Assembly: GCA_044892505.1 (NCBI GenBank)
Contig: CM097882.1
Location: 67,704,001-67,768,000 of the forward strand
DNA length: 64,000 nt
Direction: 5' to 3'
Source of the DNA: Schmidtea nova
Taxonomy: Eukaryota
Shown: positions 840 through 28,019 of the stretch, piece after piece
Layout of the letters: each line of letters opens with the position of its first letter
Position numbering within the stretch: position 1 is the stretch's first letter
Notes under the pieces: model-generated
Told to the model about the DNA's origin: nothing
Seen by the model: the letters and a program-made list of their open reading frames with translations, nothing else
The model's database searches: none
Position numbers and translations under genes: made by a program

Positions 840-895
<56 letters not shown>

Positions 896-3302: not shown

Positions 3303-3359
<57 letters not shown>

Positions 3360-6300: not shown

Positions 6301-7410
6301 AAAATTGTCATTAAAGTGTATCAGTAAATGTAATATGCTTTCACAATTTGTCTGTTACATTGATCGAAGCTCATATGCTAATGATTGTTATTTTAGTATG
6401 TGTGAATAATGAGCTTTTGCACATAAAAACCATCACAAAAGATGTTCTGTTACTAAAGGTTCTATTCGAAATGTTCTGCTAGTGGATAAATTTAATGAAA
6501 ATTATACGAGTGACAATAAATTGTTAGAGTAAATTCTACATTAAAATGAGGAAAGCCAATAGATATTTAAAAAAAACAATAGAGAAAATATTAACTGGTG
6601 AAAATATTAGAACAAATGATGCTGAATGAATTGCAATAAATGTTCGAGTAATAAGCTTTGACAGATAAAATCCATCACAGAATAGGTTCTGCTACTAAAT
6701 GTTCTGTTCGCAATGTTCTGCTAGCATGAAATTAATATAATAAAATGATAGTCTGTGACAAAAAATGTGAAATAATTATTGGAAATATATAGTCCGTAAC
6801 AAAGATGTGAAATAATTATGAATAATACGCGCGCGGGTTAAATAAAATGAGACATCACAAAAACATCAAGAATTTAAACATTATTGTAAAAAACAAAATG
6901 GGTTATCAAAATTCATGTTCTAAATAAAACTTTAAAATTTAAAATGCCACAACGTAAAATATTTATAAAGTACCACAACGTAATAAAAGTTGGTATATAT
7001 CTATTACAATTTTATAAGTAATTCATTTGAGATATAAATATTAATTTAGGGTATATTGTCAGATGTTAAAAAAACTTCAACATTAAAAACAAAGTATCAA
7101 GCAAGATATCCTAAGAAACATATCCATCATTACATATATATTCAAATTTCTGAATATTTAATAATTTCATCGAAAGATCAAAAACATGGTCTGAAATATT
7201 TTATGATTTAAATTATTTCACCTCTTCACCTCTTCATATCTTTAAATAGTCATAAATGTCATCAATAGCTTTACTATAAATTATGTATCTATACATTCAA
7301 AAAGGTTATGTACTTTACATGTTTATTATTTAATATAACAAATATACTAATAAAATTTTAACTCGGATGATGTATAACAAAACAAAACAAATCTATTAAA
7401 ATATTTTATT

Positions 7411-7686
7411 TCATTGAACATCTTTCGATTCTCGGATTTCATTCATTAATCTTTCATTTTCAATTTTCAACTTGATTATTTCTATATTCCTTTTGCGAAG
7501 CTTGATTAATAGCCTTTCTTTTGAGTCCAAATATGAATAGATTATGTTCTGTATTTCTTCGATTGGACTCTTGATTTCTTTATTTCTTTCTAATAAATGT
7601 AATAATAATAACTTTATAAAAAATAAATATAATTTTACTTGAACGTTTTCTTGAAAGTTTAGGACTTTCAAATATCGAACTTCCAT
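7411..7686 (-). CDS. Small hypothetical ORF in the palindrome spacer (F-box-like motif plus coiled coil)
   Basis: PIEEIQNIIYSYLDSKE resembles the F-box LP.EI...IFSYL pattern, followed by a K/E/L-rich heptad-like tail. Confidence 0.3.
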   Translation of the reverse strand: MEVRYLKVLNFQENVQVKLYLFFIKLLLLHLLERNKEIKSPIEEIQNIIYSYLDSKERLLIKLRKRNIEIIKLKIENERLMNEIRESKDVQ

Positions 7687-8741
7687 TTATTGATATTGTT
7701 TCCTTAACTTCATTATCATTATTGGTATTTTGTTGACAATTCATAGTTTAAATGAATTACTTATAAAATTGTAATAGATATATACCAACTTTTATTACGT
7801 TGTGGTACTTTATAAATATTTTACGTTGTGGCATTTTAAATTTTAAAGTTTTATTTAGAACATGAATTTTGATAACCCATTTTGTTTTTTACAATAATGT
7901 TTAAATTCTTGATGTTTTTGTGATGTCTCATTTTATTTAATCCGCGCGCGTATTATTCATAATTATTTCACATCTTTGTTACAGACTATATATTTTCAAT
8001 AATTATTTCACATTTTTGTCAAAGACTATCATTTTATTATATTATTTTTCATGCTAGCAGAACATTGCGAACAGAACATTTAGTAGCAGAACACATATAA
8101 TCATGTTTTTTGTATGTGACGAATTTCTATGTACTTTTCATATTTTGTGTGTAACTTTGTTGATTTTCTATGTAATTGCAGTATGATGATATTTTGCATG
8201 TATTTTATACAATAGTATGATGATATTTCATGTATGTAATGATACTTTGTGATAATATTTCAAATATGTAATGTATATTTCATGTATTTTTGATATATTG
8301 GTACTATAATTTAAGAATAATATGTGTAATTATCTCAATAGTGTGATAAATTTTCATGTATTTATCATAGTGACAGAACATTTAGTAGCAGAACATTGCG
8401 ATCATAACCATAGTAACAGAACCTATTCTGTGATGGTTTTTATGTGCAAAAGCTCATTTCTTGAACATATTTCTAATAATAAATATACTGTTACCTAATT
8501 TTCAATGTCCCTTATCATCATTTCAATGCATCAGTTTAGCAAAACATTCAATTATTGGTTGGTCAATAAAATGGTTGGTTATTAAATTGGTTGATTTTTG
8601 CAATATAAATACAACTTGTAAATAATATTGATTGACGTAAATGAATAAAGAAACAAATAAAGAAACAAATAAAGTTAGTTTTAAAAATATATATATTTAA
8701 ATTAATTATTTTAAACTAGGTTACAGATAATTTCATTACTT

Positions 8742-9305
8742 TTGGACAATTGGATCCAATCATTTTTAATACTTGATGACCTTTTAACTTCAATTGAGAA
8801 ATGCGATATCGACATTCTTTCAAAATTATTCAAATCCTTCAATAATAAATTAATTATTGGTTTAACAGAATCATTCGGCTATGATAAATCTATGATGAAA
8901 TTATCCAGTTTTATTATGATTCTTAATGATATCGATTCTACTGAATTACATTTGAATTACATTTTCTGGTCATGTATGGAATTTCGTCTTGGAAAATATC
9001 GTACTATTATTCGAACTTTCATGTTGAATGTGGATATTTTAGAGGTAAATGTAACCAATAAATTTGAAGAAACCAAACAAAGATTTCTCACATGTTCAAT
9101 ATGTAATATCAATAGAGTTGGCATTTTATATTTACCTTGTGGACATGTCATTATTTGTTCAAAATGTTTAAAAGATATTGATAAGTGTGAATCTTGTGGT
9201 ATTAATATTGATGAATATCATGTGATATACATATATTGTCGTACAAAATATATGTATTTTCATTTAATTTATTTTTATCATTGGCTAAGAGAATGCACTT
9301 TGTGA
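8742..9305 (+). CDS. RING-finger protein with IAP/MDM2-type C3HC4 RING and no BIR domain
   Basis: CSICNINRVGILYLPCGHVIICSKCLKDIDKCESC matches the IAP-type RING pattern. The TTG start is uncertain and a splice acceptor may lie upstream. Confidence 0.7.
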   Translation: MDNWIQSFLILDDLLTSIEKCDIDILSKLFKSFNNKLIIGLTESFGYDKSMMKLSSFIMILNDIDSTELHLNYIFWSCMEFRLGKYRTIIRTFMLNVDILEVNVTNKFEETKQRFLTCSICNINRVGILYLPCGHVIICSKCLKDIDKCESCGINIDEYHVIYIYCRTKYMYFHLIYFYHWLRECTL

Positions 9306-10110
9306 TTAATTATTAGTCTTTTTTTCGACATCTTGTCTTTGTTCACTTGGCTTGCCACTGCAATGTCTTTGTTAACTTGCATCTGTATTACAATGTCTTT
9401 GTTAATATTGCACATGAATTGCAGTGTCAAAATGAGTAGGAAAATAAATAAATAAATAAATATATATATATATATATTACGTTGAGGTAGTTTAATTATT
9501 TTATTTTGACATCTTGAAGGTTTGAAAATATACATACACACATCTCAAATATCTTTCGCATGATATTTATATAGTTTTAAAAATTTTGAACCCTTGAATG
9601 TTTCTTTTTTAAAATTATCATTATTATTATTACTATTATTATTGAATGTATGTCATTGTAATTCTGGCTTGCAATGATTTTGTTAACTTGCATCTGTACT
9701 GCAATGTCTTTGTTAATATTGCAGTGTCAAAATGAGATTATTATTATTATTATTATTATCATTATTATTATTATTATTGTTATTATTAGTAACTTGTATG
9801 TATGTCTTTGTTAACTAGTATCTGCATTGCAATGCCTTTGTTAAGATGTTTTGGCAATACAATGTCTTTGTTTAAAAGATTTTGAATCNNNNNNNNNNNN
9901 NNNNNNNNNNNNNNNNNNNNNNNNNNNNNNNNNNNNNNNNNNNNNNNNNNNNNNNNNNNNNNNNNNNNNNNNNNNNNNNNNNNNNNNNNNNNNNNNNNNN
10001 NNNNNNNNNNNNNNNNNNNNNNNNNNNNNNNNNNNNNNNNNNNNNNNNNNNNNNNNNNNNNNNNNNNNNNNNNNNNNNNNNNNNNNNNNNNNNNNNATTT
10101 GTTAACTAGT

Positions 10111-11400
10111 GGTTGATTTCGGTCGGGTTCTTCTGATTTTCTCGACGGAATCATTGTCATTCTCATTCAGCAATCCATTAACTGCTTTCCCCCGATTATC
10201 ACTGCTCCGCTTCCTGATTCTGTCAGTGCCATCATCGTTATCATCATTCGTGTGCACCAACGAGGACGCAGATGAAGTCCGATGGGAATCGCCACCAATG
10301 TCTTCCATCAAATGAAAAGCCAAACAAGCAACCAATAGGCCTCCAAACGTTTCATTTATTTGCCAATAAGTGAGCAACTCGATCATATATATACTTTATA
10401 CTTTAAATCAAAAAAATTAAAAACCCATAATTTCCTCATTTTCCAAAAGACCACTCTAATTTACAAAAAAATCTTTACACAAAAACTTAAATTTTTTCCT
10501 TTTTCATAAAATTTATCTAATTTACAAAAATCCCAATTTAAAATTCAAAATTACAAAATAATTACCAAATTTTAGAAATTATAACTTAAACACAAATTAA
10601 GTTCAAATTGAATTGTCACTAAAAAAATAGAAATTGTGCTCAATAGTCCTAACGACATCGTGAGAGTTAGCATTTTCATCGTTTTCATTTGTCGGTTTGT
10701 ATGTATGATTCGTCTGGCTGGGACAATTCCCCACTGGCGGCTAACTTCTGTTGAGATACCAGCGTTATTTTAGCTTTAGCATTGCAATTCCATGAAGTGG
10801 ATTCGCATTCTACATTGCATTGCAGGAAAATGCCCATTGATCGCTGGCTTTTATCCAAATTTGTAGAATTGTTTGGAACTCGAAACATTACTAAAGTCTT
10901 CCATGGCAAGCATCGAACTGTTATCGTATCACTTAGAAGCTATTTCTCTCTGCCGGGCTCGAAATTGGTCTAGCCTCATCATCATCGGCATATAAATCAC
11001 CGGTGTCATCTACCATTTATTTATTTATACCTTCTGCAGTAGACGTTTAGGTATTAGAAAATTAATCGTAATTTTGTAAACCCGAAAACACTACACCACA
11101 TCCGTTGGTGTTGTTTTGATTCAAAATAGTTAAAGGTGAATCTATTTTATTATTATGCGAAGAGAAATTTGTCATTTCCGGAAGAGTTGAATCAATATCC
11201 ATTGGTTCGTTGGAATTTATGTCATTGGATATTGTGCTTTCTCATTGATCATGTTCATATAAGATTTATATAGATTTCGATAAGTCCGTTTACCGGCTTC
11301 AAGGCTCGCCCCACAATCTCTCACAGCGATCAAGCACCCAATATATTATTTTAATTATTATTTAATTAATTTTAAAATTATTTTAAAAGCGGGCGCGACC
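10111..11400 (-). mobile_element. Truncated copy of the pogo-type cargo element (copy A)
   Basis: Blocks 10111-10315, 10375-10640 and 11260-11400 match 23207-23405, 23908-24110 and 24410-24560. Flanked by AACTAGT direct repeats within palindrome-arm modules. Confidence 0.75.
10748..11016 (-). pseudogene. USP7: Captured fragment of the USP7/HAUSP N-terminal MATH (TRAF) domain
   Basis: MVDDTGDLYADDDEARP, then after a frameshift and stop VRCLPWKTLVM...SMGIFLQCNVECESTSWNCNAKAKITLV. Compare USP7 VRNLPWKIMVM...[25 protein letters not shown]. Confidence 0.85.
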
Positions 11401-12625
11401 AACTAGTATCTGCATTGCAATGTCTTTGTTAACTTGCATATGTATTGCAATGTCTTTGTTAACTTGCATATATATTGCAATATCTTTGTTAGCATGTTGC
11501 TTACACTGCACGAGTATTGCAATGTCTTTGTTAAGGATCTTGGCAATGAAATGTCTTTGTTTTATCAATTGATGCTGAATAAAGTTGAATTGTAATTAAT
11601 TTTCGAGTAATAAACTTTGGCAGATAAAAACCATCACAAAAGATGTACTGATAGTAAATGTTCTGCTAGTAAATGGTCTGTTCGTAAGGGTTTACGCAAG
11701 GAAATGTCTTTGTTAAGTAATTTGGCAATGAAATGTCTCTGTTAAGTAATTTGGCATTGAATTGTCTTTGTTTAAATATTTAACCAATGAAATATTTTTT
11801 TGTCTTGGTTATTTTATAAAATTTTTTATATGTTATTATTTATTGTAATTTAAGTTTAATATTATTATTTTTTTTTAAGTTTAAAAGTTTTTTAAAAATT
11901 TATTATTATTATTATTATTATTATCATAATTATCTTTTTTCACCTTTGATCTTTTTTTATTATTATTATCAATAATTCTCATAATGACTATAGATCAAAA
12001 TTTTTTTTTATAAACAATTGTTTATAAAAAAAAAATTTGATCTATAGTCANNNNNNNNNNNNNNNNNNNNNNNNNNNNNNNNNNNNNNNNNNNNNNNNNN
12101 NNNNNNNNNNNNNNNNNNNNNNNNNNNNNNNNNNNNNNNNNNNNNNNNNNNNNNNNNNNNNNNNNNNNNNNNNNNNNNNNNNNNNNNNNNNNNNNNNNNN
12201 NNNNNNNNNNNNNNNNNNNNNNNNNNNNNNNNNNNNNNNNNNNNNNNNNNNNNNNNNNNNNNNNNNNNNNNNNNNNNNNNNNNNNNNNNNNNNNNNNNNN
12301 NNNNNNNNNNNNNNNNNNNNNNNNNNNACTATAGATCAAAATTTTTTTTTATAAACAATAACACAATATTTCGGCACAGCNNNNNNNNNNNNNNNNNNNN
12401 NNNNNNNNNNNNNNNNNNNNNNNNNNNNNNNNNNNNNNNNNNNNNNNNNNNNNNNNNNNNNNNNNNNNNNNNNNNNNNNNNNNNNNNNNNNNNNNNNNNN
12501 NNNNNNNNNNNNNNNNNNNNNNNNNNNNNNNNNNNNNNNNNNNNNNNNNNNNNNNNNNNNNNNNNNNNNNNNNNNNNNNNNNNNNNNNNNNNNNNNNNNN
12601 NNNNNNNNNNNNNNNNNNNNNNNNN

Positions 12626-13398
12626 GCGGAGTGTTACAACACACACACATGAATATGACCATCATACTCAACTTTCAATTACCTTTTGTTTGATACATAT
12701 ATTACATAGTTTTGAACCTTGGACCCTTCGAGGGTTGACCACCCACCTTCAAGGGTATGTCCATGAAACTCATTTATCAATTACCTTTTGTTTGATACAT
12801 ATATTACATAGTTTTAAAAATTCTGAACCTTGGACTCTTCGAGGGTTGACCATCATACTCCACTCTCAATTCCCTTTTGTTTGATATATAACTTGTAATG
12901 TTTAAAATATTTGAAGGTTTTTTACCCTTTTAAGGTTGAGCACCCACCATAGACCTTTGAAGGTATGACCATTGTGTGCATATCTCAATTACCTTTCGAA
13001 TGATATATAACTTGTAAGGTTTGAAAAGATTTGAAGGTTTTGCACTTTTTGAAGGTTGAGCATCCACCATACACCTTCGAGGGTATAACCGTTGTGTGCA
13101 CCTCTCAAAGACCTTTCGAATGATACCCTTGTTTGAAGGTTTGACCTTATTTGACCTTTGGAAATTTGAATTTAAAATGAGTCATCGATGACGTCATAAC
13201 CTTTATTTGACCTTTGGAAATTCAAATTTAAATTTTGAATTTGAAATGAGTCATCGATGACGTCATAAAATTTGAAATGAGTCATCGATGAGCCATAAAA
13301 AATTTTCTACCCCATGGGGAGGGGGTAGAGAAAAATGAGTCATCGATGAGTCATATGTCTTTGTTCTCGATGAGTCATGCTCCTCATAACTATCTACT
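12626..13398 (-). mobile_element. Polinton/Maverick-like terminal inverted repeat (right end)
   Basis: Reads 5'-AGTAGATAGTTATGAGG on the - strand from 13398. Contains multiple ATGA(C/G)TCAT and ATGACGTCAT boxes and ~100-130-bp subrepeats. A 5'-AG(TAG) start is typical of Polintons. Confidence 0.65.
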
Positions 13399-14178
13399 AT
13401 GGTCTGCCTTAAACTTTCACTATTCAGTGCTATTAGATTTTCAACAGTTCATTTTAATGATGAGTTAACTCCAAAAACATTCAAGGCACTAATAATTGAA
13501 GCTACAGAATGGTCTTGAAATCATGTATATTGAAAATCGAACTTATCATGAAATATTTGCTCAATTATCAAAAAAAATTAAGAAAATTCAAGTCAAAAAA
13601 ATTTATGCAATTTAACCATAAATTTTTTTCCTCAAAATTTTGTATATCTTATAGACTAAATTCTCTGGTTATGGTATTACCAGATTTAACATTTTGAATG
13701 GCAAAATTTTGTTTATGAATTACTTAAAAATAAGTATTTTTTTTCGAGGATTTAAAAATTGTATTTTGTACTCAATTGGTGAAAAGCCTTTTTGTTTAAA
13801 TAAATAATTTCAAGTGATTAATTTGTAGTTAGATTTTTTGAGCCACTATCATCACAATTTGGAATACACGTCGATCAATTTAATTCTGTACTCTGCATGT
13901 TTGCTGCCTCACTGATGGATCGGCAGTTCCAGACGAAATACAGCATCAAAAATATCAGTGCTGAACAAAGGCATCGGTTTTTATTTTGCCATCAAATAAT
14001 GCATCATGTACTTTTTACCATATCAACATTCTCGTTTCATTATCCTGGTTTTCGCTATGTCCTCTTTAGCTATACACTTGACATAACTGGTGGCATTTGC
14101 GTGAAGAATAAAGAACAACAGAAAATTTACAATTTAACATCGTTTCATATATCATTTTCAAATAACAAATTCAATGAA

Positions 14179-14294
14179 TATCCAAATGTAATGCGTGATT
14201 GTGAAATTCATTTGAATTTCAAAGTTCACAGAGACAGGGGCACATTATTTGGAGATGGATTAGCGTTTTGGTTTACAGACAATCCTTTACAGCC
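14179..14294 (+). pseudogene. L-type lectin (VIP36/LMAN2-like) fragment embedded in a mosaic ORF
   Basis: MRDCEIHLNFKVHRDRGTLFGDGLAFWFTDNPLQP compared with LMAN2-type LRDWELQVHFKIHG...LHGDGLAIWYT.DRMQP. The flanks are not lectin-like. Confidence 0.7.
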
Positions 14295-15193
14295 AGACAC
14301 TTACAACATCCATAATGCTCCACCAAAAATGGTGTCAGAACAAAATATCAATTGTCAATCTACAAGTCAAAAGGAAATCAAACATTTCGCTCCGAAGTCT
14401 CACAACAGCCAGCAAAAATGAATAATTCTTTTCAATTATGCTCATCTTACTCTTAAATTGCAAGTAGTCAAATGGAAGTCGTTAAGCGAATAGCAGCTAC
14501 AACGCAACCACTATCATTTCTGATGCATTTAATAAATCGACAAAATCAACCTTCAATTCCCATAATTTTAACCCCATCGCGAGTAAATCTAAATTCTCAA
14601 ATAGATTGTGCTCAAATGGTAAGAATGCCAACCAGTTCACAAGTCAGCCACTAACATTCGACAGGCTTTGTATATACTACAACAGAATTTAATCTCACAA
14701 AGTGATAAATCCAAACAAGCTAACAATCATATATCAGATGCCTGCTGGTTCAGTTTCCAATCTGTCTTTAATCATTAACAACTCAACGAATAGTAGCCTA
14801 TCAGCAATAACAATAAATTCATCTCCAGTCGTTTCACAGAATCAAAATGCTACAATTCTTCCAATGAGTAACGTCGACGTTCAGACATTAGAAGCGATAA
14901 ATCGATCGATTTCTCAGCAGAATCCAAAACCAATAAATTCAAAGCCAGTAAATTCCAATCTTTCTCTCATTCAAGCGGATTCCAAAGTCGCTCAACAGTT
15001 GATTAATGGCTTTCAAAAGCAGTCTCCTCGCACACCGTCGGGTGTTAATTCACAGGGATACATGTCAATTGGTCAAACATCGGAAGCAACACAAATCAAC
15101 ATGAAAAATAGCAATAACATCAAATCTATCATAATTTTTTCACCAGCTCCATCGAAAATGAACTTAAACACCAACAACGATATTGATAATTAG
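14295..15193 (+). pseudogene. Broken N/S/Q-rich reading frames, probably a fragment of an unidentified host gene
   Basis: Consecutive ORFs 13897-14421, 14472-14654 and 14702-15193 are low-complexity. The last stop (TAG) coincides with the AGTAG terminus at 15192. Confidence 0.4.
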
Positions 15194-16427
15194 TAGGTAG
15201 TTAGTGGCTCCCTGACTCACTGGCTTTCTAACCCCCCCCTAGAAAAAAAGTGAGTTAGGAAGCCACTATGTTTTTTCGTCGATCTTTTGTATAGGAAAAT
15301 TTTTTGTCGGTGTTTTGTATAGGTGAGTTAGAAAGCCACTATGTTTTTTCGTCGATCTTTTGTATAGGAAAAATTTGTCGATCTTTTGAATAGGATTTTC
15401 TACTCCGAGATTTTTTCTCGGGCAAAAAGGGACTCTTGATTTGTGTACAGGGATTTTGAATAGGATTTTTGGTCTGGTTTTTGAATAGGATTTTTGGTCT
15501 GGTTTTTGAATAGGATTTTTGGTCTGGTTATTTTGAATAGGGAATTTTGGGTCGATCTTTTGTATAGGAAATTTTTGTCGATCTTTTGAATAGGATTTTC
15601 TACTCCCAGATTTTTCTCGGGCAAAAAGGGACTCTGAAATTTTGTACAGGGATTTTGAACAGGGATTTTTGGTCAAGTATTTTTGTATAGGATTTTGGTC
15701 TGGATTTTTTGAATAGGATTTTCTACTCCCAGATTTTTCTATGGCAAAAAAAGACTCTGATAATTTTATTTTGAAATTAAAAAAAACACGTGTAAATTTT
15801 TTTAAACTAGTAAAATAGATTGAAATTATTTTGAATAGGATTTTCAATTCCCACAATTTCTAGGGCAAAAAGGAGCACTGGTAATTTTGAACTGAAATTT
15901 TAAATAAAGATTTAAGAAAAGGATATTAAACACATGGTAAAGTTAAATAGGCAATAAAACATGGAGAATTTTACAAAAACATAAGAATGACATAATTTTT
16001 AAAACTTAATGAAAAAGGGTAAAATTAAAGCAAAGTCAGAGTTGAAATGACATAATATTTAAAATTTAATAAAAAAAGGGTAAAATTAAGGCAAAGTTAG
16101 AGTTGAAATGGCATAATATTTAAAATTTAATTAAAAAGGGTAAAATTAAGGCAGTCAGAGTTGAAATGACATAATATGAAAAATTTAAAAATAAGTACGA
16201 AATTTTTTGGGAAATCTCGGAGTTGGTTATTTAAAAGTAAAATTTTTAAAGTAAAATTTTTAAAGTAAATTTTTCAAAGTAAAGTTTTTTAGAATAAAAT
16301 TTTTTATACAATTTTAATTTTTATAAAATCTTAAACTAAATTCAATAAACTTTTTTATACTGAAATTTTTTATGATAAATAAAAAACACGTGTAAATTTA
16401 GAAAAATGATAAATCGATTTAAATGGT
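15192..16427 (+). mobile_element. Second Polinton/Maverick-like terminus (left end) with subterminal satellite-like repeats
   Basis: Starts AGTAGGTAGTTAGTGG...TGACTCA...CTAACCCCCCCCTAGAAAA, the same architecture as the 13398 end. Followed by GAATAGGATTTT arrays and ~58-bp repeats that resume after the gypsy insertion at 22205. Confidence 0.55.
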
Positions 16428-17021
16428 TGTAGTGCCTTAGATTAAATTTTCAATTTTATAAATTAATTAATTATTAAATGGATTAAATTAGATGTTGTTT
16501 TAATATTTACATATTTACTCTTTTTCACGCTGATCAAAAAAAATGCAAGCTGTTAACAATGATTCGATATACCCATTCACTCAAGACATTCACATCGACT
16601 CGTTTTCATCAAATGACAACAATTATCAGTTCTACTCTAGTGGAGATTGTGTAGTCGATATTCAAAGAAGAAACAATTGCCAGTTCCGCAGATTGCAGAA
16701 ATGTTTCGCTGCTGGAATGCGTAAAGAAGCCGTACAAACTGGAAGATGCTTGTCAACAACTGGATCAATATGAATATACTATCCAGACAAATCTGAAATG
16801 TATAACTCAAAAAATCTACAAATCAATACATTGGATCACAACCAATCTCGATTAAACGATTATTCGCCAGCACCAGAAATCAATCAATACGGACTGTCAT
16901 AGAGCTTGCTCATTTCAACTCTTGTTATCATCGGTCAGGATTTCCGGTTGCCAAAGACCAACTTGTCAATTGGAGATCGATTTCTATTAATAAAATCTTA
17001 TTTGCTTTTAGCATTCCTACA
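16428..17021 (+). repeat. 5' LTR (594 bp)
   Basis: TGTAGTGCC...TTCCTACA. Near-identical to 21606-22199; one A/G difference noticed at 16901 vs 22079. Confidence 0.97.
16642..16746 (+). pseudogene. Nuclear hormone receptor DNA-binding domain fragment (second zinc finger plus T-box) inside the 5' LTR
   Basis: GDCVVDIQRRNNCQFRRLQKCFAAGMRKEAVQTGR compared with HNF4-type [34 protein letters not shown]. One ligand Cys is replaced by Arg. Confidence 0.85.
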
Positions 17022-17023
17022 AT

Positions 17024-17037
17024 TGGTGTCAGAAGTG
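17024..17037 (+). promoter_or_regulatory. Primer-binding site
   Basis: TGGTGTCAGAAGTG, 2 nt after the LTR CA end. Confidence 0.85.
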
Positions 17038-17414
17038 ACAAACGTAAGCTTTTTGAATTTATTATGTAAATATTTAAATTCATCTAATTGCTCCATTTAT
17101 ATTAATAATAATTTTAATAATATATTGAATAAAAATTTTAATAATTATTTTAATAATAATTTTCATACTCCGCTTACCAAAACTACAACAGTTTTCTCTA
17201 CCTGTTCACAACCATTTACCCTTCATGACGGCTTACTCAACATCACTGTACGCCACAAAAATATTATTCACTCAGTTAAAATTACCACGACAATTTTTTT
17301 TAACGATATTAAACGTTTTTTTTAATTGAACACAACGACTTCTTTATTTTAAATAACGGAGTTCCCATCACAGATCCTCTTTCAGTCCCAACAAACGCAA
17401 TAATAACACTCTTC

Positions 17415-20400
17415 ATGCGGGCAAGAGGCGGTGCCAAAACTAACAATGACCATAACCCTCCCACGTCCATAGGTCGCACTCAACTGATATTTTTAGACGC
17501 AGACGGCACACCATCATCTTGGTTCCGCATTTTTGAATCGCGCACTAGAGCCAATCCCAAGTCTAGGCAAGATCTTCTGCTGGATGCAATACCCGACGAG
17601 TTAATGTCAGAATTAGGCTCACAAATAGCTGACGCATTAAACTCAGAAACCCCTTATCAATCAATCAAAGCGGTCATAGAAAAAAAATATTCACCCACGC
17701 GCACTTCAGCGATTGAAAAGTTATCAAAACCCACCCCATACGCCGGTCAACCCCCATCATCCTTTTTATCGCATCTAGTACGCGAACTTGAGGCCGCCCA
17801 CACCGGTTTATCAAAAAACACTGCTCTCCTATGCCATCAATTTTTAACAGCTCTTCCACATCACATCCAGACCTCACTCCTCGTCGTCGATTCCGATGAT
17901 CCTTTTCACCTTGCAAAAATTGCTGATAAGTTGGTTACTCGACCCCCCATCCGAAACGCACCAACTACCATCGCATCAGTTTCCGACCCTTCATTACAGG
18001 AACAGATATCTTCTCTGACAAAAACAGTCGACGCGATACTCAACTCCTCTCAGTTAACTACACACACCCAAAGAAACGATAAACCGAATTCTTTTCCCCC
18101 TCTGACTTGTTCTTTTCACAAGAAACTCTCATCCGACGCAAGAACATGCCATATAGGATGTTCATGGCCAACTTTGAGGATCATTCCTATTTGCATCTAT
18201 CACAATATCTTCGGTATACACGCACAAAAATTCCTTTCAGGTTGCACATTTGTAAACCGTTTCTCAAATAAATCATGCGACAAAAACAATTTCAATTCTC
18301 CCAAAAAAAAACTAGCGCCGCTGTCTGTCAACCCTGGATTTTCAGGCAGCGTCCTTGCGATCAACAATATCTTCACTGTTGAAGCAGACTTTGACTCCAG
18401 CTCATCAATTCATTTTCTCATAGATTCGGGCTCGTCATTTTCAATCCTTCCAACAACTTTCACACCAGACTTCAAATCTTCGTTCATTGTCTTGGCCGCT
18501 AACAGCACACCGATCCAATTTTTGGGAACAAAAAAACTCTCATTCACTATACCAACATTAAACTCAACTTTCACTCACACCTTCCACATAGCAGACACGA
18601 TCCACCCAATATTAGGCTCCGATTTTTTAAGCAACGAATCCATCATGGTAGATTTCAAAAATCGTAAGTTGTTCACTGTAAAACACGACATTGCCAATAT
18701 ACCGACAATTTCATCGTCAAATGTAACATCAATTTCAACGCAGACATCTACACCGACACAACTCAACTCAATTCATCAAGATTCCACGATGGAAAACGAT
18801 AAAAACACGTTGGACATCGACCAATCAGCCAATCTAGATACGATCGATGACATGATCAAATTAATTTCAATCAAATATCCAAACCTCATCACTAAATCCG
18901 ATACCATACCACCCACTACCTTATCGACTCACTATATTCACACATTACCATGCATACCACAACACAATCGAGCCAGACCTCTCTCTTCCACGAAACTCGA
19001 CGCAGTCAAAGCTGAATTTGTTAGTCTAGAAAACGCAGGCATTATACGTCGTTCATCTTCACCATGGGCTTCGCCAATACACGTAGTAACAAAAAAAGAC
19101 GGGTCATTCAGACCCTGTGGAGATTATCGACAGCTCAACCAAGTAACAGTCCACGACGCCTACCCAATGCCACTCATTAAAGATTTAATAACACGCTTTT
19201 CACAATCTACAGTGTTCTCAACTATAGACCTCTCGAAAGCATACCACCAATTTCCCATCCATACGGACGACGTCCCCAAAACGGCTGTCACTACACCATT
19301 TGGGAATTTTGAATACATGTTCATGCCTTTTGGTCTTAGAAACGCAGCTCAGTCCTTACAACGTTTCATGGACACAATTCTTTGCGATGTCCCTCACACT
19401 TTCGCATACCTTGACTATATCATCATAGCATCCCCGGATCGAGACAGCCACTAAAACGATTTACACACGGTCCTTGATATATTGAACCGTCACAACTTAC
19501 AGATAAACGTAAACAAATGTAGCTTGTTTCAAGAACGCGCCAGATTCCTTGGCCATATACTTTCATCTACTGGTTGTGAACCTTTCCCCGAAAGACTTTA
19601 AGTAATCCGCAGCTTTCCCCTGCCAACCACCGTGACACAACTACGTAGCTTTTTAGGCATCGTCAACTTCTGCCATAGATTCAATAAAAGCGCATCTCAC
19701 ATAACAGCACCTCTTTCAGCACTGAACACAGGAAAAAAGAATTCCGTCATCAATTGGTCCAACACAACACGCGACTCATTCAACAAAGTCAAAGACGCTC
19801 TAACCAAGATTACCACTCTTCACTACCCATGTCACGACCTCCCATTCACCCTGAAAACTGACGCATCAAATATTGCTGCAGGCGCAGTCCTTCACCAAAT
19901 TAAGGATAAAATCTCACTACCAATAGAATTTTTTTCGAGAAAATTTTCATTAGCAGAGTCAAAGTACAGCGCATTCGACAGAGAATTACTTGCCATTTTT
20001 CTAGTAGTCAAACATTTTAGTCACATTTTAGAAGGAAGACAATTTACAATCTTCACCGACCACAAACTTCTCATCCACTGCCTTACCATGAAAGACCCAT
20101 CGAACAGAGTACATCGTCAGATAACATACCTATCAACTTTTGATATTAAATTTGTTCACGTTTCGGGCAAAAATAATGTAGTCGCCGATTATCTTTCTAG
20201 AAACATTGCTACATCAATTACCTCTACCCCGGTTTTCACCCAACAAATTCTCCGTTCGACTCCACCAACGACAGCTGACCTCGCCCGCTTCAAAGACTCG
20301 CTTGAGATAATAGACGGTATACATTATGACCCAACGTATAAAAACACTCTTAGACCAATTTTGCACTCGTCACTCAGAAAAGAAGCATTCTTCGCGATTC

Positions 20401-21575
20401 ATAATCTACACCATCCAGGAATTAAGTCCACATACCATCTCATACGACAAAAAGTCACTTGGTTCTCATTATTTAAAGACGTTAAACAGTGGGTCTCTGA
20501 ATGTACAGGCTGCCAACAACACAAAGTGAACAAACATACTAAACCACCAATCACACCATTCCCGACTGGTTCAAGATTCGACATACTCCACATCGACTTA
20601 GTAGGCAAACTCCCCGCTGACGAAGGATTCTGCTATATACTGACAATGATCGATAGGAAAACACGCTGGTTCGAGGCTATTCCAGTTGCTGACATCACCG
20701 CAAAAACGGTTGCACACGCCTTAATATCCACTTGGTTTTCGCGTTATGAAATCCCAACCGCCATAATCACAGACCAAGGAACACAATTTGAATCAGACCT
20801 TTTCGATCATCTGACCACTAGCCTCGGTATCAGTCATTTACGTACCAGCTCATATCACCCACAAACAAACGGTCTTGTGGAACGCGCCCACCGGACTTTG
20901 AAATCATCCCTCAGAATACTCTCAACGACAACTTCGTGGACCAAAGCATTACCATTCGTCTTGCTCGGGTGGCACAACACTCCCAACCGCTTAAGTGGCG
21001 TGTCACCTTCACAACTTTTGTTCGGTTCCAACACATCCATGCGCAACGAACTCATAGATCTACAGAACGAATCGTCACTAGAGGAAATCAACCTCACTCG
21101 CAATCATTTTTTGAGTCTTGATACAAATCCATCTTTCACATATTCTACATCATACAAACCGTATATACCACAATCACTTTCATCTGCCACCCACACATGG
21201 ATGAAGACAATTGACTCATCAAACCTCAAACCTAGATACAAAGGCCCATTCCGCATCATCGAACTATACAAAAACACAGCGAAACTAGAAATTGATAACA
21301 ATCACATTATGGTCAACCTATCAAGATTAAAACCATCCTTTTGCACACTTGAGTATGATGAACGACCAAATTACCATATCATAAAAGAAGATCCTATAGA
21401 TGAAGACATTCAAGAAGACACGGAACAACTGAAGACCCTTACAGAAACGCCCAATACCCAACTTTCTCAAGACAACCCGCCATTCCTTCTAGGCGAACAA
21501 GTAAACTCCCTCAATATCTCTCCGATTATCACCTTCAGTGACTCACCCAACACCCAAATTCATTTTGTAGCTTAG
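17415..21575 (+). pseudogene. Single-frame gag-pol polyprotein with two in-frame stops
   Basis: Gag CHCC (CSFHKKLSSDARTCHIGC), protease FLIDSGS, RT YMFMPFGLRNA and YLDY, RNase H TDAS/ELLAI/TDHK, integrase HHCC, DDE and GPF. TAA at 19452 and ~19599 in the same frame. Confidence 0.93.
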
Positions 21576-21593
21576 AGACGCTCCGCGTACTTC

Positions 21594-21601
21594 GGCGGGG
21601 G
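21594..21601 (+). promoter_or_regulatory. Polypurine tract
   Basis: GGCGGGGG, 4 nt before the 3' LTR. Confidence 0.7.
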
Positions 21602-21605
21602 CTAT

Positions 21606-22199
21606 TGTAGTGCCTTAGATTAAATTTTCAATTTTATAAATTAATTAATTATTAAATGGATTAAATTAGATGTTGTTTTAATATTTACATATTTACTCTT
21701 TTTCACGCTGATCAAAAAAAATGCAAGCTGTTAACAATGATTCGATATACCCATTCACTCAAGACATTCACATCGACTCGTTTTCATCAAATGACAACAA
21801 TTATCAGTTCTACTCTAGTGGAGATTGTGTAGTCGATATTCAAAGAAGAAACAATTGCCAGTTCCGCAGATTGCAGAAATGTTTCGCTGCTGGAATGCGT
21901 AAAGAAGCCGTACAAACTGGAAGATGCTTGTCAACAACTGGATCAATATGAATATACTATCCAGACAAATCTGAAATGTATAACTCAAAAAATCTACAAA
22001 TCAATACATTGGATCACAACCAATCTCGATTAAACGATTATTCGCCAGCACCAGAAATCAATCAATACGGACTGTCATGGAGCTTGCTCATTTCAACTCT
22101 TGTTATCATCGGTCAGGATTTCCGGTTGCCAAAGACCAACTTGTCAATTGGAGATCGATTTCTATTAATAAAATCTTATTTGCTTTTAGCATTCCTACA
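21606..22199 (+). repeat. 3' LTR (594 bp)
   Basis: Direct repeat of 16428-17021. Confidence 0.97.
21820..21924 (+). pseudogene. Nuclear receptor zinc-finger fragment in the 3' LTR
   Basis: ORF 21721-21951 encodes the same 76 aa as 16543-16773. Confidence 0.85.
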
Positions 22200-23156
22200 A
22201 TGGTTAAATTAAATAGGTAATAAAACATAGAGAATTTTACAAAGACAAAAGAATGACATAATATTTAAAATTTTATAAATAGGGTAAAATTAAGGCAAAG
22301 TTAGAATTTAAATGACATAATATTTTAAATTTAATAAAAAAGGGTAATTTTTTGGCAAACTCAGAGTTGGTAAATTTTTAAATATAAAATTAAAATTTTT
22401 TCACAAAATGAAATTTTTAAACTAATAAAAGTCTTAAGAAATAAAACTTTACCACATAAAAATTAATCAAGAAATAAAATTTTTTAGCAAATAAAAATTA
22501 AACATTACAAATCGAATTTCAAATACAAAATTTTATTCAAGAAAGGTTTTGTTGTAATATATTCTTCTTAATTCTGCCAAAGGAAAAGTGTTTGGTCTGG
22601 GAATTTCCAAAAATTAAAAAGTTGTCAGAATTCAATAATTTTATACCAATCTACTGCGAATTGAAAGGCGAACAATAAAGGTCAAAAATTAAAATCATGA
22701 AAAAATCAAAATTTTATACAGGAAATGTCAGTCTCAGTAAAAAAGGGCAAAGTACATAAAAAACGTGGAAATATTTAAAAACTTTTTAAACTAAATAATT
22801 AAATCTAAATAAATTTATGATAATTAAATAAAAAAGTAAATAATTTCTATACGAATTTCCAAACTCAGTAAATAATCCAATCAATATTTTTGTATTGAAT
22901 TTATTAAGTAAAATGATACATTAAATAAAAAGCATGGAAATAATAAGTAAATTAAAGTTAGAAATTTAAAATAATTTGTACTGGATTTATGAAAATTGGT
23001 AAAGTAAATAAATTAAAGATAGAATTTGAAAAATAAATTAAGAAATTAAAGATAAATAGAATTATAAGCAAATAATTCTTTTAAAAATAAGTAAATTAAG
23101 AGAGACGTGAGTTTTAATGACAAAATTTAAAAATGAATTGGTTCTAAATGAACTTT

Positions 23157-23723
23157 TTAAAGTAATATTTGAAAAATGTGAGAATACAGGAATACCTCGA
23201 ACAGTATGGTTGATTTCGGTCGGGTTCTTCTGATTTTCTCGACGGAATCATTGTCATCCTCATTCAGCAATCCATTAACTGCTTTCCCCCGATTATCACT
23301 GCTCCGCGTCTTCCTGATTCTGTCAGTGCCATCATCGTTATCATCATCCGTGTACACCAACGAGGACGCAGATGAAGTCCGATGGTAATCGCCACCAATG
23401 TCTTCCTCCTCATCCGAAGACAAACAAATGTTCTCCTCTACCCCATTAACGGGAACTGTTTCACATTTAATAACAGCAGCATCATTAACCTCCTGGCGGA
23501 ACGCATCAATCAGCTGCTGCTTGTTATCAGGCTGGATAGAAATATGACCAAACAATTGACTAGCTGGTTCGTTCAAACGCTCATAGCCGCACCTATTCAA
23601 AGCATCCAATAATTCTGCACCTTCAATATCACTTCCCAATTGCTCAATAATTGATTTAATTGAGGCTTCCTTCAGATCCATAAATCCAGAATATAAATCC
23701 ATATTATTTAAAAAACCAATCAT
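23157..23723 (-). CDS. 188-aa hypothetical cargo ORF (helical N-terminus plus acidic tail)
   Basis: Open and GC-richer than its flanks. The acidic C-half is shared with copy A (10102-10386). It reads through the left TIR. Confidence 0.45.
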   Translation of the reverse strand: MIGFLNNMDLYSGFMDLKEASIKSIIEQLGSDIEGAELLDALNRCGYERLNEPASQLFGHISIQPDNKQQLIDAFRQEVNDAAVIKCETVPVNGVEENICLSSDEEEDIGGDYHRTSSASSLVYTDDDNDDGTDRIRKTRSSDNRGKAVNGLLNEDDNDSVEKIRRTRPKSTILFEVFLYSHIFQILL

Positions 23724-25161
23724 ATTTTTAAATTCTTCAAAATAAAGATCATTATTTAAACATCCATATATTATAACCCCATTACAAATTTTTAAATTCC
23801 TTTACATTACCCATCAGCAAATTACAAAATCATTTATATTCCAATTTACACAAATTCTAATTATTCTTCATTCAAAAAATCCATTTATATATCCATCATT
23901 ATTTAAACAACTCCATCATATATAACTTTTTACTTTAAATCAAAAAAATTAAAAAATAATTTCCTCATTTTCCAAAAGACAACTCTAATTTACAAATACA
24001 TTTTTTTAAAATTCACAGTCCATATATCAAACTAATTTTCCACTTTATCATAAAAAATCCAAAATTTAAAAATTACAAATTCAGTTCAAATAGAATTGTC
24101 ACTAAATAGAATTAGGCCACTGTGGGTTTGTGGCGCACTGTTTACATTGTCATATAATTCAGGAGACAACACTTAAAGGAATCGGTGAATCGATTAAGTC
24201 CATAGTCCGAGAGTTGGGATGCTGATGAAATAGTGATTGGAAAACACACGGTCTGCTGTGAAGATAATTATCCATTCTGTATAATGCGCCGAGTGCCGAT
24301 CCTTCAACAACGTTGATTACCACTGATCCGACGAGTGAATGTATCACATATTTAATAGAAGAATGAATGTCAATTGCACCTCCCATGTTGTGGTGCCCAC
24401 GCCATATCATATACGATTTATATAGATTTCGATAATACCGTTTACCGGTTTCAGACTTCCAGACTCGCCCCATAATCTCTCACAGCATCAAGCCCCGCCT
24501 TTTACTATTTTATTTTTATTTAATTACTTTTTTAATATTTTACAAAGCGGGCACGACCAAGTACGGTTAATCATTTCTGGAATTTAGCCGTACTATTTGA
24601 AACCGGATTTTTCGAGGCATTCTGGCGCTAATAAATTTACAGCTTAGTACCCCTATTAAGAAATTTAAAAATCGTGATTATAATCTAGTAAACAAAAAAT
24701 ATTTTGTTATGTTTTTTTATTTTTCTGATATTCAAGAGCAAAACAAGCATATTTAACACAGTTCTACATTTAAATATATATTTATTGAAATTTATAAGCC
24801 GGCAATACCAATTCATTGCAACTAAATCAAAAAAAAGAATTTATTTAATTTTAAAAATATTAAAAATAGCTGATGAAAAACAAGTAAAAATTAAATTAAA
24901 TAAACACAACAATTTAATTTAAAAAAGATCAACAAAAGCAATTCACTTAAATTCTAATGTTTAGATTCATTTTTCATTGTTAAAAAATTTCAATAACGAT
25001 GTTTGAACTTTATTTGGTCGTTTCTCCTCATACAATTCTTTGTAGCAATGAATTGAACTTTTTTAAATTTCGAAAATTTTATTTAATCATTTTAAAAACA
25101 ATCATATTTTGAAAATTTCAAAACCGTACTGATCGAAACCATAATATGCGAGGTATTCCTG
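23187..25161 (-). mobile_element. Non-autonomous pogo/Tigger-type TIR element carrying non-transposase cargo (copy B)
   Basis: TA|CAGGAATACCTCG...CGAGGTATTCCTG|TA, with imperfect TIR similarity to ~25 bp. Transposase C-terminal remnant inside. Confidence 0.85.
24967..25060 (-). pseudogene. pogo/Tigger transposase C-terminal remnant
   Basis: KSSIHCYKELYEEKRPNKVQTSLLKFFNNEK* resembles the CY..LY.EK...KQTSL..FF tail of pogo transposases. Confidence 0.65.
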
Positions 25162-25689
25162 TAATTAAATATTTTTGAAATTCTTTAAAGTAAAATTTTT
25201 TAACAATAAAATGTAATTTTTTTTTAAACATTAACCAACAAGTATAATTTTTTAATTAAAAAAAATACAAAGTAAATATTTTTTTTCACAAGTAAAATTA
25301 TTAATTAATAAATACAAATCTAACTGTTTTTCATTATGATATTTTTTAAGGAAATGATCAAATAACAACAAATAAATGTAGTAAATAAAACACATGTAAA
25401 TATTAAATTTATTTAGAATAAAAGTAGTTATTAAACAAGAGTTGCTACAATTTTGTATACTAAGTTAGAAAATATCGATTAATGACATAAATTTTTAAAA
25501 ATAAACGTAATTATTGAAAATATGGGAACAAGTAAAATAATAATAATATTAATAATAATAATAAGTAACGCATATCAATCAATCTAAGTACCAACAATAA
25601 ACCGATCAACTAACAAATAATCTCATTACACATACAAATCATCCACTGACTAGTATTTGATCAAATACCAACTGACTCTATCCACAAAT

Positions 25690-27130
25690 CAAAAACGTAC
25701 TAGTTACTTACCAGTTACCAACTGACTATACATGTTAACCAACTAGTTCTTTACATTAACCAACTTAATCTATTCATTAATCCTATACCAACCAACTACT
25801 CACCCTTTACACACAAATCAACAACTAACTGATACAATACCAACAGACTCTATCCAAAATCAATTGGTTAAATCAACTAATCAGATACCAACTGACTCTA
25901 TGTATTAACCAACTAAGAAAATTGTTCCATATGTCAATCATTTATCTCAGTTAACAAACAAACAAAGTACTTACTTACCAAATAGTTCTATACATCAACC
26001 AACTAACTCTTCTCATTAACCAACTAACTCGTCTCATTAACCAACTAACTCTTCTCATTAACCAACTGACTCTTCTCATTAACTAACTATACACACTAAC
26101 CAACAACTAATCTCTTACTTACCAACTAACTCTTCTCATCAACCATCTAACTCTTCTCATTAACCAACTAACTCTATTCGCAAATCACCAACCAACTGCA
26201 CTAATCAACTAACTAACTATACATACTAACCAGCAACTAATCTCTTACTTACCAACTACAACAATACATCAACCAACTAACTCTTCTCATTAACCAACTA
26301 ACTTTATTCACAAATCACCAACCAACTGCACTAATCAACTAACTAACTATACATACTAACCAACAACTAATCTCTTACTTACCAACTAGTTCTATACATC
26401 AACCGACTAACTCTTCTCATCAACAAACTAACTGTTCTCATCAATCAACTAACTGTTCTCATTAACCAAGTAACTCTATTCACAAATCACCAACCAACTA
26501 CACTAATCAACTAACTAACTATACACACTAACCAACAACTAATTCCTTGCTTACCAACTACATCAATACATCAACCAACTAACTCTTCACATTAACCAAC
26601 AAATATTATTCATTAATCTTATACCAACCATACCAACTATATTAACCAACCAACTAACTAACCACTCTAACTATCAACCAATATCTTACTTTCCAACTAC
26701 TTCTTCTCATTAACCAACTAAATCTATTCCCAAATCACCAATCAACTACCCACTCTATACATACTAACCAGTCAGCAACCAAATACCTACCTACCAAGTA
26801 GTTTTACACATTAACCAACTACTTCTACATGTTAACCAACTAGTTCTTTACATTAACCAACTAGTTATATTCATTAATCCTATACCAATTAACCAACCGC
26901 TCTATACATACTAACGAGAAATCAATTCCTTACTAACCAACTAGTTCTATACATCAACCAACTAACTCTATTCACAAATCACCAACCAACTACACTAACC
27001 AACTAACTAATTATACATACTAACCATCAACCAATTCCTTACTTACCAACTATTTATATACATTAACCAACTAACTCTATTCATAAATCAACAACAGACT
27101 AGTTACTTATTAAAAATCAATCGATTCTGT
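25690..27130. repeat. A/C-rich complex minisatellite (AACCAACTAACT core, 21-bp units)
   Basis: Repeated AACCAACTAACTCTTCTCATT and higher-order blocks; G is nearly absent on the + strand. Confidence 0.9.
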
Positions 27131-27739
27131 CCACAATCAACTAGTTAAATCAACTCTATATTAAACAAATAAATCTTCACTCTAAGGAAATTGTTCCACG
27201 TATCAATTAACTCTTCGTATTAATTAGATATGATATTTAAAACTAACTGATTCTAAATGTCTTGTCATAAAATTAAATTTATTACTTAAAATAATTGAAT
27301 TAATCTTTAGTTGATTATCAGTTTTTTAAAAAGGTATACAAATAACCGCGTTGTTAAAATGAAATTTTTTTTTTATTAAACAAAGTTCTTAAAATTTAGA
27401 ATATATTTAAAATACAAATGACTTTTAATCCAAAGCTCAATTGAAATCCTTGTTCATCTAATTCTTCACTTGATAACTAACATGTATAATTAACTTAAAA
27501 ATCATTATAAAAAACTCTGTTAACTAGGTAAACTTATTAAAATGATAAGTAAGCAACTAATGAAATATTTTTTGATACTTCTTATTACATGTTCAAATTA
27601 ATTCTTCACTCCGTTAATTTAAAAAATTAAATAAATAAATATTCAATTAATATTTTGTTGATTGTCAATAAATTCTAAAAATAATAAAAATTAATTCAAA
27701 AATTTCAATACAAATATTTATTTATTAAACATTTTCGTT

Positions 27740-27920
27740 AACCACGCTAAACAGTACTACCATAGGTTTTTTCATCGGATTCTGGTATCAGATTCAGTTA
27801 TATTCAATTCACATCAACATTGACGATAATCTTTTCATCAATAGAGGTGGATAATAAAATCTCATTGGATCAAACATATGTATTTTATTGGGTTTCACAA
27901 AAACTGCAATCATGAAAATA
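27740..27920 (-). pseudogene. Adenain-like cysteine protease remnant (Polinton-type)
   Basis: (H)-IAVFVKPNKIHMFDPMRFYYPP...IEYN*I*YQNP follows the HW....YFDS.G..PP...EYN...YQ...CG pattern, with stops and indels. Confidence 0.5.
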
Positions 27921-28019
27921 TAATTTGAATCTTTTAAAGGTAAAAACCATCACAAAAGAGGTTCTGCTACGAAAGGTTCTGATAGAAAGGTTCTTCTACG
28001 TGATAAATAATTTCAAAGC

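What the first reader, a model, noticed from the sequence alone, without database searches (positions are those of the whole stretch)
10111..25161. pogo-type Pack-TIR family whose copies share a scaffold but carry different cargo
Seen: copy B (23187-25161) has TA TSDs, CAGGAATACCTCG TIRs and only a transposase tail. Copy A (10111-11400) shares three blocks with B in the same order. Between those blocks A has ~610 bp including the USP7 piece where B has a different ~300 bp, and ~60 bp where B has ~500 bp of the 188-aa ORF. Inference: an animal Pack-TIR lineage with fixed slots that take up different host fragments, i.e. a possible exon-shuffling vehicle.
Basis: partly seen in the sequence, partly recalled or inferred. 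Interest (0 to 1): 0.75.

Follow-up and report, generated by a model that had tools for sequence, protein, structure and literature searches.

The report
Transposon carrying swapped host-gene fragments
A small cut-and-paste transposon in an AT-rich animal genome carries a patchwork of host-gene pieces, and a second copy of that patchwork without transposon ends holds a different host gene piece at the same spot. This is a known kind of gene-fragment capture, seen here in only two copies and with no sign of function.

Summary
The sequence facts hold. B (23187-25161) has TA flanks and a perfect 13-nt terminal inverted repeat. A (10110-11402) shares four collinear blocks with B, at 98-89% substitution identity.

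New findings:
- Where A has a USP7 MATH-domain piece, B's "different ~300 bp" is a piece of protein phosphatase methylesterase 1 (PPME1). One position therefore holds two different host fragments.
- The other "slot" is not a slot. B's 188-aa ORF is one gene fragment running into shared block 1, and A lacks about 480 nt of it.
- The ORF is not shown to be a transposase tail. It has no Pfam or PDB match, and its only relative among 1.8 billion representatives is a 292-aa orphan protein.
- A has no inverted repeats and none of the transposon backbone. It sits in a satellite, bounded by a duplicated CTAG.
- In B the shared unit lies between the two 15-nt units of the left 40-nt inverted repeat. 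What A and B share is cargo, not transposon.

Best reading: B is a Pack-TIR-like element, and A is a copy of its chimeric cargo without inverted repeats. "Fixed slots" and "pogo" cannot be tested, because no other genomic copy could be reached. All host pieces are fragments.

The parts
23187..25161 (.). Element B: non-autonomous TIR element of 1,975 nt, flanked by TA at 23185-23186 and 25162-25163
23187..23226 (+). Left TIR: 10-nt tip, a 15-nt unit (23197-23211), then a weak unit (23212-23226)
   Evidence: 30/40 identical to the right end in register. Positions 21-40 match 13/20, reached by 27 of about 124,000 window 20-mers.
25122..25161 (-). Right TIR: 10-nt tip plus two tandem 15-nt units
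23207..24560 (-). Shared cassette as it lies in B. It starts inside the first left-TIR unit and ends inside the second.
23157..23723 (-). 188-aa ORF with an acidic, Ser-rich tail that reads out through the left TIR. Residues 39-130 (23334-23609) resemble the orphan protein P0001.
23724..24106 (-). AT-rich (20% GC) intron-like spacer holding shared blocks 2 (23908-23996) and 2b (24075-24106)
24107..24406 (-). B-only piece: fragment of a PPME1 (protein phosphatase methylesterase 1) gene, with homology at 24228-24395
   Evidence: PDB 3c5v_A residues 116-171, E 6.4e-10
24407..24560 (-). Shared block 3, with a TATA-like stretch on the minus strand about 12 nt before the variable piece begins
   Evidence: the promoter role is inference
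24553..24568 (+). Further plus-oriented copy of the 15-nt TIR unit, taken as the displaced second unit of the left TIR
   Evidence: score 12 against the right-end unit, reached by 1 of 38,761 random 16-mers; exact motif match
24586..24625 (-). Inner, degenerate but complete copy of the right end, 17 nt after the unit at 24553-24568
   Evidence: 28/40 to the right TIR; 15/20 over positions 21-40
24626..25121 (.). AT-rich (24% GC) right arm with no recognisable content
10110..11402 (-). Copy A: the cassette alone, with no TIR and no backbone
10110..10326 (-). Block 1 in A: tail of the ORF, 86% identical at protein level to ORF188 residues 100-172
10375..10623 (-). AT-rich spacer in A with blocks 2 and 2b
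10624..11254 (-). A-only piece: 5' part of a USP7-like gene, with MATH-domain homology at 10751-10909. The reading frame is interrupted at least twice.
11255..11402 (-). Block 3 in A
10104..10109 (.). Left copy of the duplicated target (CTAG, at most AACTAG). The right copy is at 11401-11406. Together the two flanks rebuild a satellite unit seen intact at 9806-9835.
11403..11800 (+). Satellite of about 30-nt units into which A is inserted; the same satellite lies at 9334-9888
9889..10096 (.). Assembly gap 13 nt left of A. Further gaps at 12051-12327 and 12381-12625 lie outside A and B.

Best explanation
B is a non-autonomous, TA-inserting inverted-repeat element of the Tc1/mariner-pogo group. 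The superfamily cannot be decided here.

Its backbone is small: a 40-nt end made of a 10-nt tip plus two 15-nt units, a 17-nt loop, an inner degenerate right end, and then about 500 nt of AT-rich DNA up to the outer right end.

About 1.34 kb of gene-like DNA lies between the two units of the left end. All of it is on the minus strand. It consists of a 150-nt block with a TATA-like stretch, an internal piece of a PPME1 gene, an AT-rich intron-like spacer, and the 3' part of an orphan acidic protein gene. This is a Pack-TIR-type structure, meaning host DNA captured inside a transposon.

A is a second copy of that chimeric cassette alone, inserted in a satellite. It has a USP7 5' piece where B has the PPME1 piece, and it lacks about 480 nt of the orphan gene piece. 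The scaffold A and B share is therefore cargo, not transposon.

Shown: the anatomy, the identities of the pieces, the block boundaries and the uneven divergence.

Inferred:
- The cassette entered the transposon by template switching or gap filling during repair or replication.
- The middle piece was exchanged by a further switch between family members and a host gene.
- Block 3 acts as a promoter.

None of the host pieces is a whole gene, and no function is shown.
For: - TA flanks and a perfect 13-nt TIR are rare by chance.
- TIR similarity continues in register to position 40 and stops there, as it does between the two right-end copies.
- All three exact copies of AGTAYGGTT in the 64-kb window lie in B, with two further one-mismatch copies there, oriented + + - - -.
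- The unit at 24553-24568 is a significant unit copy, and it abuts the end of A-B homology.
- The cargo identities are USP7 and PPME1. ORF188 relates to P0001 across the block 1 boundary.
- A's 631-nt piece and B's 300-nt piece share nothing with each other or with the rest of the window.
- Substitution identity falls from 98.0% in block 1 to 89.0% in block 3 (Fisher p = 7e-4). This fits a mosaic history.
- Animal Pack-TIRs, 115 of 370 of them TcMariner, and their switch-based origin are described in PMC8277862.
Against: - There are only two copies, and no parental USP7, PPME1 or orphan gene could be reached, so capture and its direction are not shown.
- A ends exactly where the cargo ends in B and is bounded by a clean 4-6-nt target duplication. 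The shared unit also begins TG and ends CA. These points fit a unit that inserts by itself.
- The weak second unit at 23212-23226 scores only 8/15 (p about 0.02).
- The outer right end lies 536 nt beyond the inner one, which this model does not explain.
- No transposase or autonomous partner was found, so 'pogo' rests on the TA flanks and the form of the ends alone.
Confidence: 0.45

Rival explanations
1. The 1.3-kb shared unit is an insert in its own right, for example a solo LTR or another element with TG..CA ends. It landed once in the satellite (A) and once 20 nt inside the left end of a small TA-type MITE (B). On this reading the TA-type element is a bystander, and the unit itself is what carries the host fragments.
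For: - The ends are the same in A and B.
- The ends are TG..CA.
- Flanking direct repeats are ACTAG/ACTAG in A and AGTA/AGTA in B, and each contains a TA.
- An LTR element 5 kb away has TG..CA ends, a 5-nt duplication, and a host-like zinc-finger exon inside both LTRs. LTRs carrying host pieces therefore occur in this window.
Against: - The unit's first 20 nt match the right TIR in register at 13/20, about 2e-4 by chance.
- Its last 7 nt complete a full TIR unit.
- Both coincidences are needed at once for this reading.
- The duplication lengths differ: 5 nt in A and 4 nt in B.
- The unit has no significant terminal inverted repeat.
- A TATA-like stretch about 130 nt from one end would leave more than 1.1 kb for R-U5, which is unusual for an LTR (own knowledge).
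- No internal gag/pol partner lies in the window.
Confidence: 0.25
2. This is a multicopy Pack-TIR lineage that moves by transposition and repeatedly takes up new host fragments at the same junctions. A is a decayed member that lost its ends.
For: - Two different host fragments lie between identical junctions, on the same strand.
- Block divergence is mosaic.
- Multicopy Pack-TIRs exist in animals.
Against: - A's flanks are an intact satellite unit with a CTAG duplication. There is no decayed TIR and no TA-only duplication.
- One of the two claimed slots is a plain deletion.
- With n = 2, no recurrence can be shown.
- Multicopy Pack-TIRs were 4 of 370 in 100 animal genomes.
Confidence: 0.15
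3. A and B descend from one ancestor that held both the USP7 and the PPME1 pieces, and they differ only by deletions.
For: - The 480-nt difference in the ORF region is deletion-like.
- About 75 nt of A's piece and about 120 nt of B's piece are unidentified.
Against: Each copy would need a deletion ending exactly at a shared block boundary and exactly at the USP7/PPME1 junction. No remnant of the other piece is left in either copy.
Confidence: 0.1
4. Part of the picture is an assembly artefact: A is a chimeric contig end next to gaps.
For: - A starts 13 nt after a gap.
- The contig holding A ends in a palindromic repeat at another gap.
Against: A's blocks, the USP7 piece and both satellite junctions lie in one uninterrupted stretch of 1,954 nt (10097-12050). 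B lies far from any gap.
Confidence: 0.05

Closest known systems
Pack-TIRs of animals (Tan et al. 2021, PMC8277862), TcMariner class
   Same: Host DNA of 100-5000 nt lies between the two ends of one non-autonomous TIR element. The cargo is gene fragments, and the proposed origin is template switching or gap filling.
   Different: - In that study each case has a traced parental copy at 90% identity or more; none could be traced here.
- Nearly all cases there are single-copy.
- Here the cargo is chimeric, with at least two host genes.
- A second, TIR-less copy carries a different middle fragment.
Pack-MULEs of plants (own knowledge: Jiang et al. 2004)
   Same: Cargo is chimeric, drawn from several genes inside one element. 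Members with related ends carry different fragments.
   Different: Pack-MULEs belong to the Mutator superfamily, with 9-10-nt duplications and long TIRs. This element is in an animal, has TA flanks and has 40-nt ends.
Ssk-FB4 of Drosophila (PMC8277862)
   Same: It is a multicopy captured gene unit that includes upstream sequence.
   Different: All Ssk-FB4 copies share one cargo and have full TIRs with distinct duplications. Here the cargo differs between copies, and only one copy has TIRs.
Tigger/pogo non-autonomous elements (PMC9219625)
   Same: TA duplication and short TIRs. That survey reports TIRs of 8-33 nt for Tigger.
   Different: The defining transposase (CENP-B-type DNA-binding domain plus DDE domain) is absent from B and from the window, so membership is open.

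Membership tests
Tc1/mariner-pogo group, non-autonomous element (B) | TA target-site duplication | tested here: met
   TA at 23185-23186 and 25162-25163
Tc1/mariner-pogo group, non-autonomous element (B) | Short terminal inverted repeats | tested here: met
   13/13 perfect and 30/40 in register; chance rate 0.015 per window
pogo/Tigger superfamily | Transposase with a CENP-B-type helix-turn-helix domain and a DDE catalytic domain, in the element or in a partner with the same ends | tested here: not met
   - B's 188-aa and 104-aa ORFs, the two longest on the cassette strand, have no such Pfam match at E up to 1; its shorter ORFs were not scanned.
- No second site with this TIR lies in the window.
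- The only DDE hit in the window is DDE_3, of Tc1 type.
- A partner elsewhere in the genome could not be searched.
Pack-TIR (criteria of PMC8277862) | An internal non-TE sequence of 100-5000 nt flanked by both ends of one TIR element, each covering at least 10 nt of the terminus | tested here: met
   Met for B. Not met for A, which has no ends.
Pack-TIR (criteria of PMC8277862) | A unique parental copy elsewhere in the genome at 90% identity or more and 80-120% of the length, not next to TEs and not an intronless retrocopy | not testable with these tools
   - No access to the rest of this genome.
- Protein searches, exact look-ups and metagenome scans were blank.
- Only protein-level likeness to USP7 and PPME1 is shown.
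Pack-TIR, multicopy by transposition | Several copies with the same chimeric structure, full TIRs and different target duplications | tested here: not met
   The window holds two copies. One has TIR and TA, and the other has neither.
Solo LTR (rival reading of the shared unit) | TG..CA ends with short inverted termini | tested here: inconclusive
   TG..CA is present (10110-11401; 23207-24559). Terminal inverted similarity is not above chance.
Solo LTR (rival reading of the shared unit) | Target duplication of one fixed length (4-6 nt) | tested here: inconclusive
   5 nt in A and 4 nt in B
Solo LTR (rival reading of the shared unit) | Full-length relatives with the unit at both ends around gag/pol | not testable with these tools

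The most novel reading that the evidence does not exclude
The cassette is a working transcription unit, made of a promoter-like block, an exchangeable first exon, an intron, and a fixed acidic SIM-like terminal exon. It exists in many copies and swaps its first exon for pieces of different host genes, all in sense orientation. A TA-type transposon spreads some of the copies. That would make it a natural exon-shuffling device in an animal.
Probability: 0.1. Interest if true: 0.75.

Novelty: new member of a known kind. Interest (0 to 1): 0.4.

Why it matters
Capture of gene fragments by DNA transposons is well documented in plants. In animals it is documented mostly as single-copy cases, and multicopy families are rare (4 of 370 in the survey of PMC8277862).

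A family whose members keep one scaffold but exchange a host fragment at a fixed junction would show how chimeric genes can be built repeatedly. It would also give defined breakpoints for studying the switching mechanism.

What is actually in this window is more modest. There is one transposon with chimeric cargo and one TIR-less paralogue of that cargo. Both are decayed, with no evidence of expression or of recurrence.

Tried and rejected
Reaching other copies or the parental genes failed in every way tried:
- Word-indexed protein search with the 188-aa ORF was blank.
- A full HMMER search of 1.84 billion representatives gave only P0001 and a low-complexity 3,919-aa protein.
- P0001 is a singleton UniParc entry with no relatives and no contig on record.
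- Exact look-ups of two window ORFs were blank.
- The bacterial/archaeal genome collection and the viral collection were not scanned, as they cannot hold an animal genome.

The organism was not identified. The best outside match to the window's hAT transposase is 51% identical, and molluscs are among the named hits.

Other attempts that led nowhere:
- AlphaFold on the ORF with a 3-row alignment gave pLDDT 35.5, so no fold search was run.
- Rfam and tRNA scans of the region were blank.
- A literature search for the TIR string was blank.
- The remaining unidentified ORFs of the two variable pieces gave no PDB match.
- One Pfam call failed on a mis-set frame, and one script call got no answer.

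Readings rejected:
- 'Transposase tail', for lack of support.
- Helitron, judged by eye, because the two copies do not share a CTRR-type 3' end.
- The shared unit as a TIR transposon of its own.
- An RNA gene or snRNA-type promoter in block 3.


Full report
**Setting.** The window is 29% G+C with seven runs of N. It is dense in satellites, inverted duplications and transposon remains. It carries animal-type exons: a nuclear-receptor zinc finger, an L-type lectin and an NSD-type PHD finger. I did not take it for human. The organism could not be named. The closest outside relative of its hAT transposase is 51% identical.

**Gaps first.**
- Gaps 12051-12327 and 12381-12625 lie 650 nt right of A and more than 10 kb left of B. 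No block or ORF of the finding crosses them.
- The stretch left of the first gap (11901-12018) and the 53-nt island between the gaps (12328-12380) both match one uninterrupted paralogue at 699-836. An inverted copy of the same 32-nt arm abuts the gap.
- Continuity is therefore unknown, and only the A-to-B distance depends on it. I filled nothing.
- More relevant is the gap at 9889-10096, which ends 13 nt left of A.

**Observation.**
- B is as described: TA, a perfect 13-nt inverted repeat, TA. Simulated windows give such a G+C-containing, TA-flanked repeat 0.015 times per window.
- A and B share four collinear blocks. Substitution identities are 98.0, 96.6, 93.8 and 89.0%.

**What the pieces are.**
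- *A-only piece.* The 631 nt hold, on the minus strand, the 5' part of a USP7-like gene. The first half of the MATH domain matches Pfam MATH at 7.7e-5, and every PDB hit is USP7, the best at 1.4e-9. Its frame is interrupted at least twice.
- *B-only piece.* The 300 nt at the same place are also on the minus strand. They hold 56 residues of protein phosphatase methylesterase 1 (PDB 3c5v_A, E 6.4e-10). The homology begins about 10 nt from the block junction, and the serine-nucleophile motif is not intact.
- *The 188-aa ORF.* It has no Pfam or PDB match. Its one relative among 1.84 billion representatives is P0001, a 292-aa orphan with acidic, SIM-like stretches and no domain.
- *The second 'slot'.* The homology to P0001 covers ORF residues 39-130, and block 1 begins at residue 106. 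The B-only 501 nt and shared block 1 are therefore one gene fragment. A lacks about 480 nt of it, and protein-level homology in A reaches 10326. This 'slot' is a deletion-like difference, and 'transposase tail' is unsupported.
- *The spacer.* The stretch between the pieces is 20% G+C and intron-like.
- *Block 3.* It has a TATA-like stretch about 12 nt before the variable piece. A promoter role is inference.

**Architecture of the ends.**
- Left and right ends agree at 30 of 40 positions in register, and agreement stops at position 40. BLAST extends the match to 52 nt.
- Each end is a 10-nt tip plus 15-nt units.
- The core AGTAYGGTT has three exact copies in the window. All three lie in B, along with two one-mismatch copies, oriented + + - - -.
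- The second plus-oriented copy (24553-24568) is a full unit, a score reached by 1 of 38,761 random 16-mers. It lies exactly where A-B homology ends.
- 17 nt further on comes a degenerate but complete right end (24586-24625), 28/40 to the outer one.
- Comparing the pieces apart, the stretch after the shared unit matches positions 31-50 of the right end. The start of the shared unit matches positions 21-40.
- The simplest reading is a small backbone whose two left units have been pushed 1.34 kb apart by the cassette. On that reading, everything A shares with B is cargo plus a few unit-derived bases at each end.

**Copy A.**
- A has no end-like sequence.
- Its flanks rebuild a satellite unit that is intact at 9806-9835, with CTAG (at most AACTAG) present on both sides. 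This can be read as a 4-6-nt duplication, or as a TA duplication plus one base.
- The shared unit begins TG and ends CA, but it has no significant terminal inverted repeat.

**Interpretation.**
- I favour (0.45) that B is a Pack-TIR-type element and A a TIR-less copy, or source paralogue, of its chimeric cargo. On this reading one host piece was exchanged and one deletion occurred.
- The uneven divergence of the blocks (Fisher p = 7e-4) fits a mosaic origin by switching among family members.
- The main rival (0.25) is that the 1.3-kb unit inserts by itself and is merely nested in a MITE in B. It explains the identical ends, the TG..CA termini and the flanking repeats. It also needs two coincidences: the start of the unit must match the right end in register (about 2e-4), and its last bases must complete a unit.
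- Two copies cannot separate these readings.

**Comparison with what is known.**
- Animal Pack-TIRs are described: 370 in 100 genomes, 115 of them TcMariner, only four multicopy, with origins by gap filling or fork switching (PMC8277862).
- B meets the structural criterion. The parental-copy criterion cannot be tested here.
- TA flanks and short ends fit Tigger/pogo as surveyed in PMC9219625, but the defining transposase is absent.
- I therefore file B under the TA-inserting group only. Novelty: a new member of a known kind.

- The pieces of broken host fragments were searched apart, by reference.
- No spliced model was attempted, because no tool here predicts introns and no relatives were available.
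- No gap was filled.

- In the script I placed the two flanks of the shared unit side by side in a variable that was neither printed nor saved.

The likeness of this TIR to Tigger ends is therefore only a remembered lead, not a result.

Noticed in passing
window 16428-22199: A young LTR retrotransposon lies between A and B.
- Its 601-nt LTRs are 99.7% identical, with TG..CA ends and a 5-nt flanking duplicate.
- Pfam finds RT, RNase H and integrase domains plus a DUF7041-type gag.
- The pol region is not one continuous ORF.
- Both LTRs contain a nuclear-receptor zf-C4 exon-like piece (ORFs 16543-16773 and 21721-21951).
This is a second case in the window of a host-like fragment inside a mobile element.
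   Followed up: partly
window 914-9888: An inverted duplication of about 2.1 kb at 95-99% identity. The left arm is broken by two inserts (1798-3405 and 4289-6685). A RING-finger ORF (zf-C3HC4_3) lies in the right arm at 8742-9305. The duplication is bounded by the same 30-nt satellite that holds A.
   Followed up: partly
window 699-840 and 11901-12380: Direct repeat of a stretch that ends in a palindromic arm. In the second copy the arm is present forward, inverted, and forward again around the assembly gap. This could be a foldback repeat or an assembly problem.
   Followed up: partly
window 43152-44495: A 447-aa hAT transposase ORF with a dimerisation domain and no BED finger. The best outside relatives are 46-51% identical, and freshwater molluscs are among the named ones.
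   Followed up: partly
window 61279-62182: Tc1-type transposase remains in two ORFs (HTH and DDE_3). The ends are different from B's, so this is not B's partner.
   Followed up: no
window 13897-14421, 39964-40392: Host-type exons: a legume-like (L-type) lectin domain piece and an NSD-type PHD finger.
   Followed up: no
window 25700-28950, 46650-47520, 53840-54750, 58700-59030: Four satellite or tandem arrays, with periods of about 130, 8-12, 29 and 36 nt. The 29-nt array forms inverted blocks.
   Followed up: no
window 10110-10306 against 23207-23406: All four substitutions between the two copies of the ORF tail change the amino acid, and the single indel is 3 nt and in frame. The count is too small to read as selection.
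   Followed up: partly
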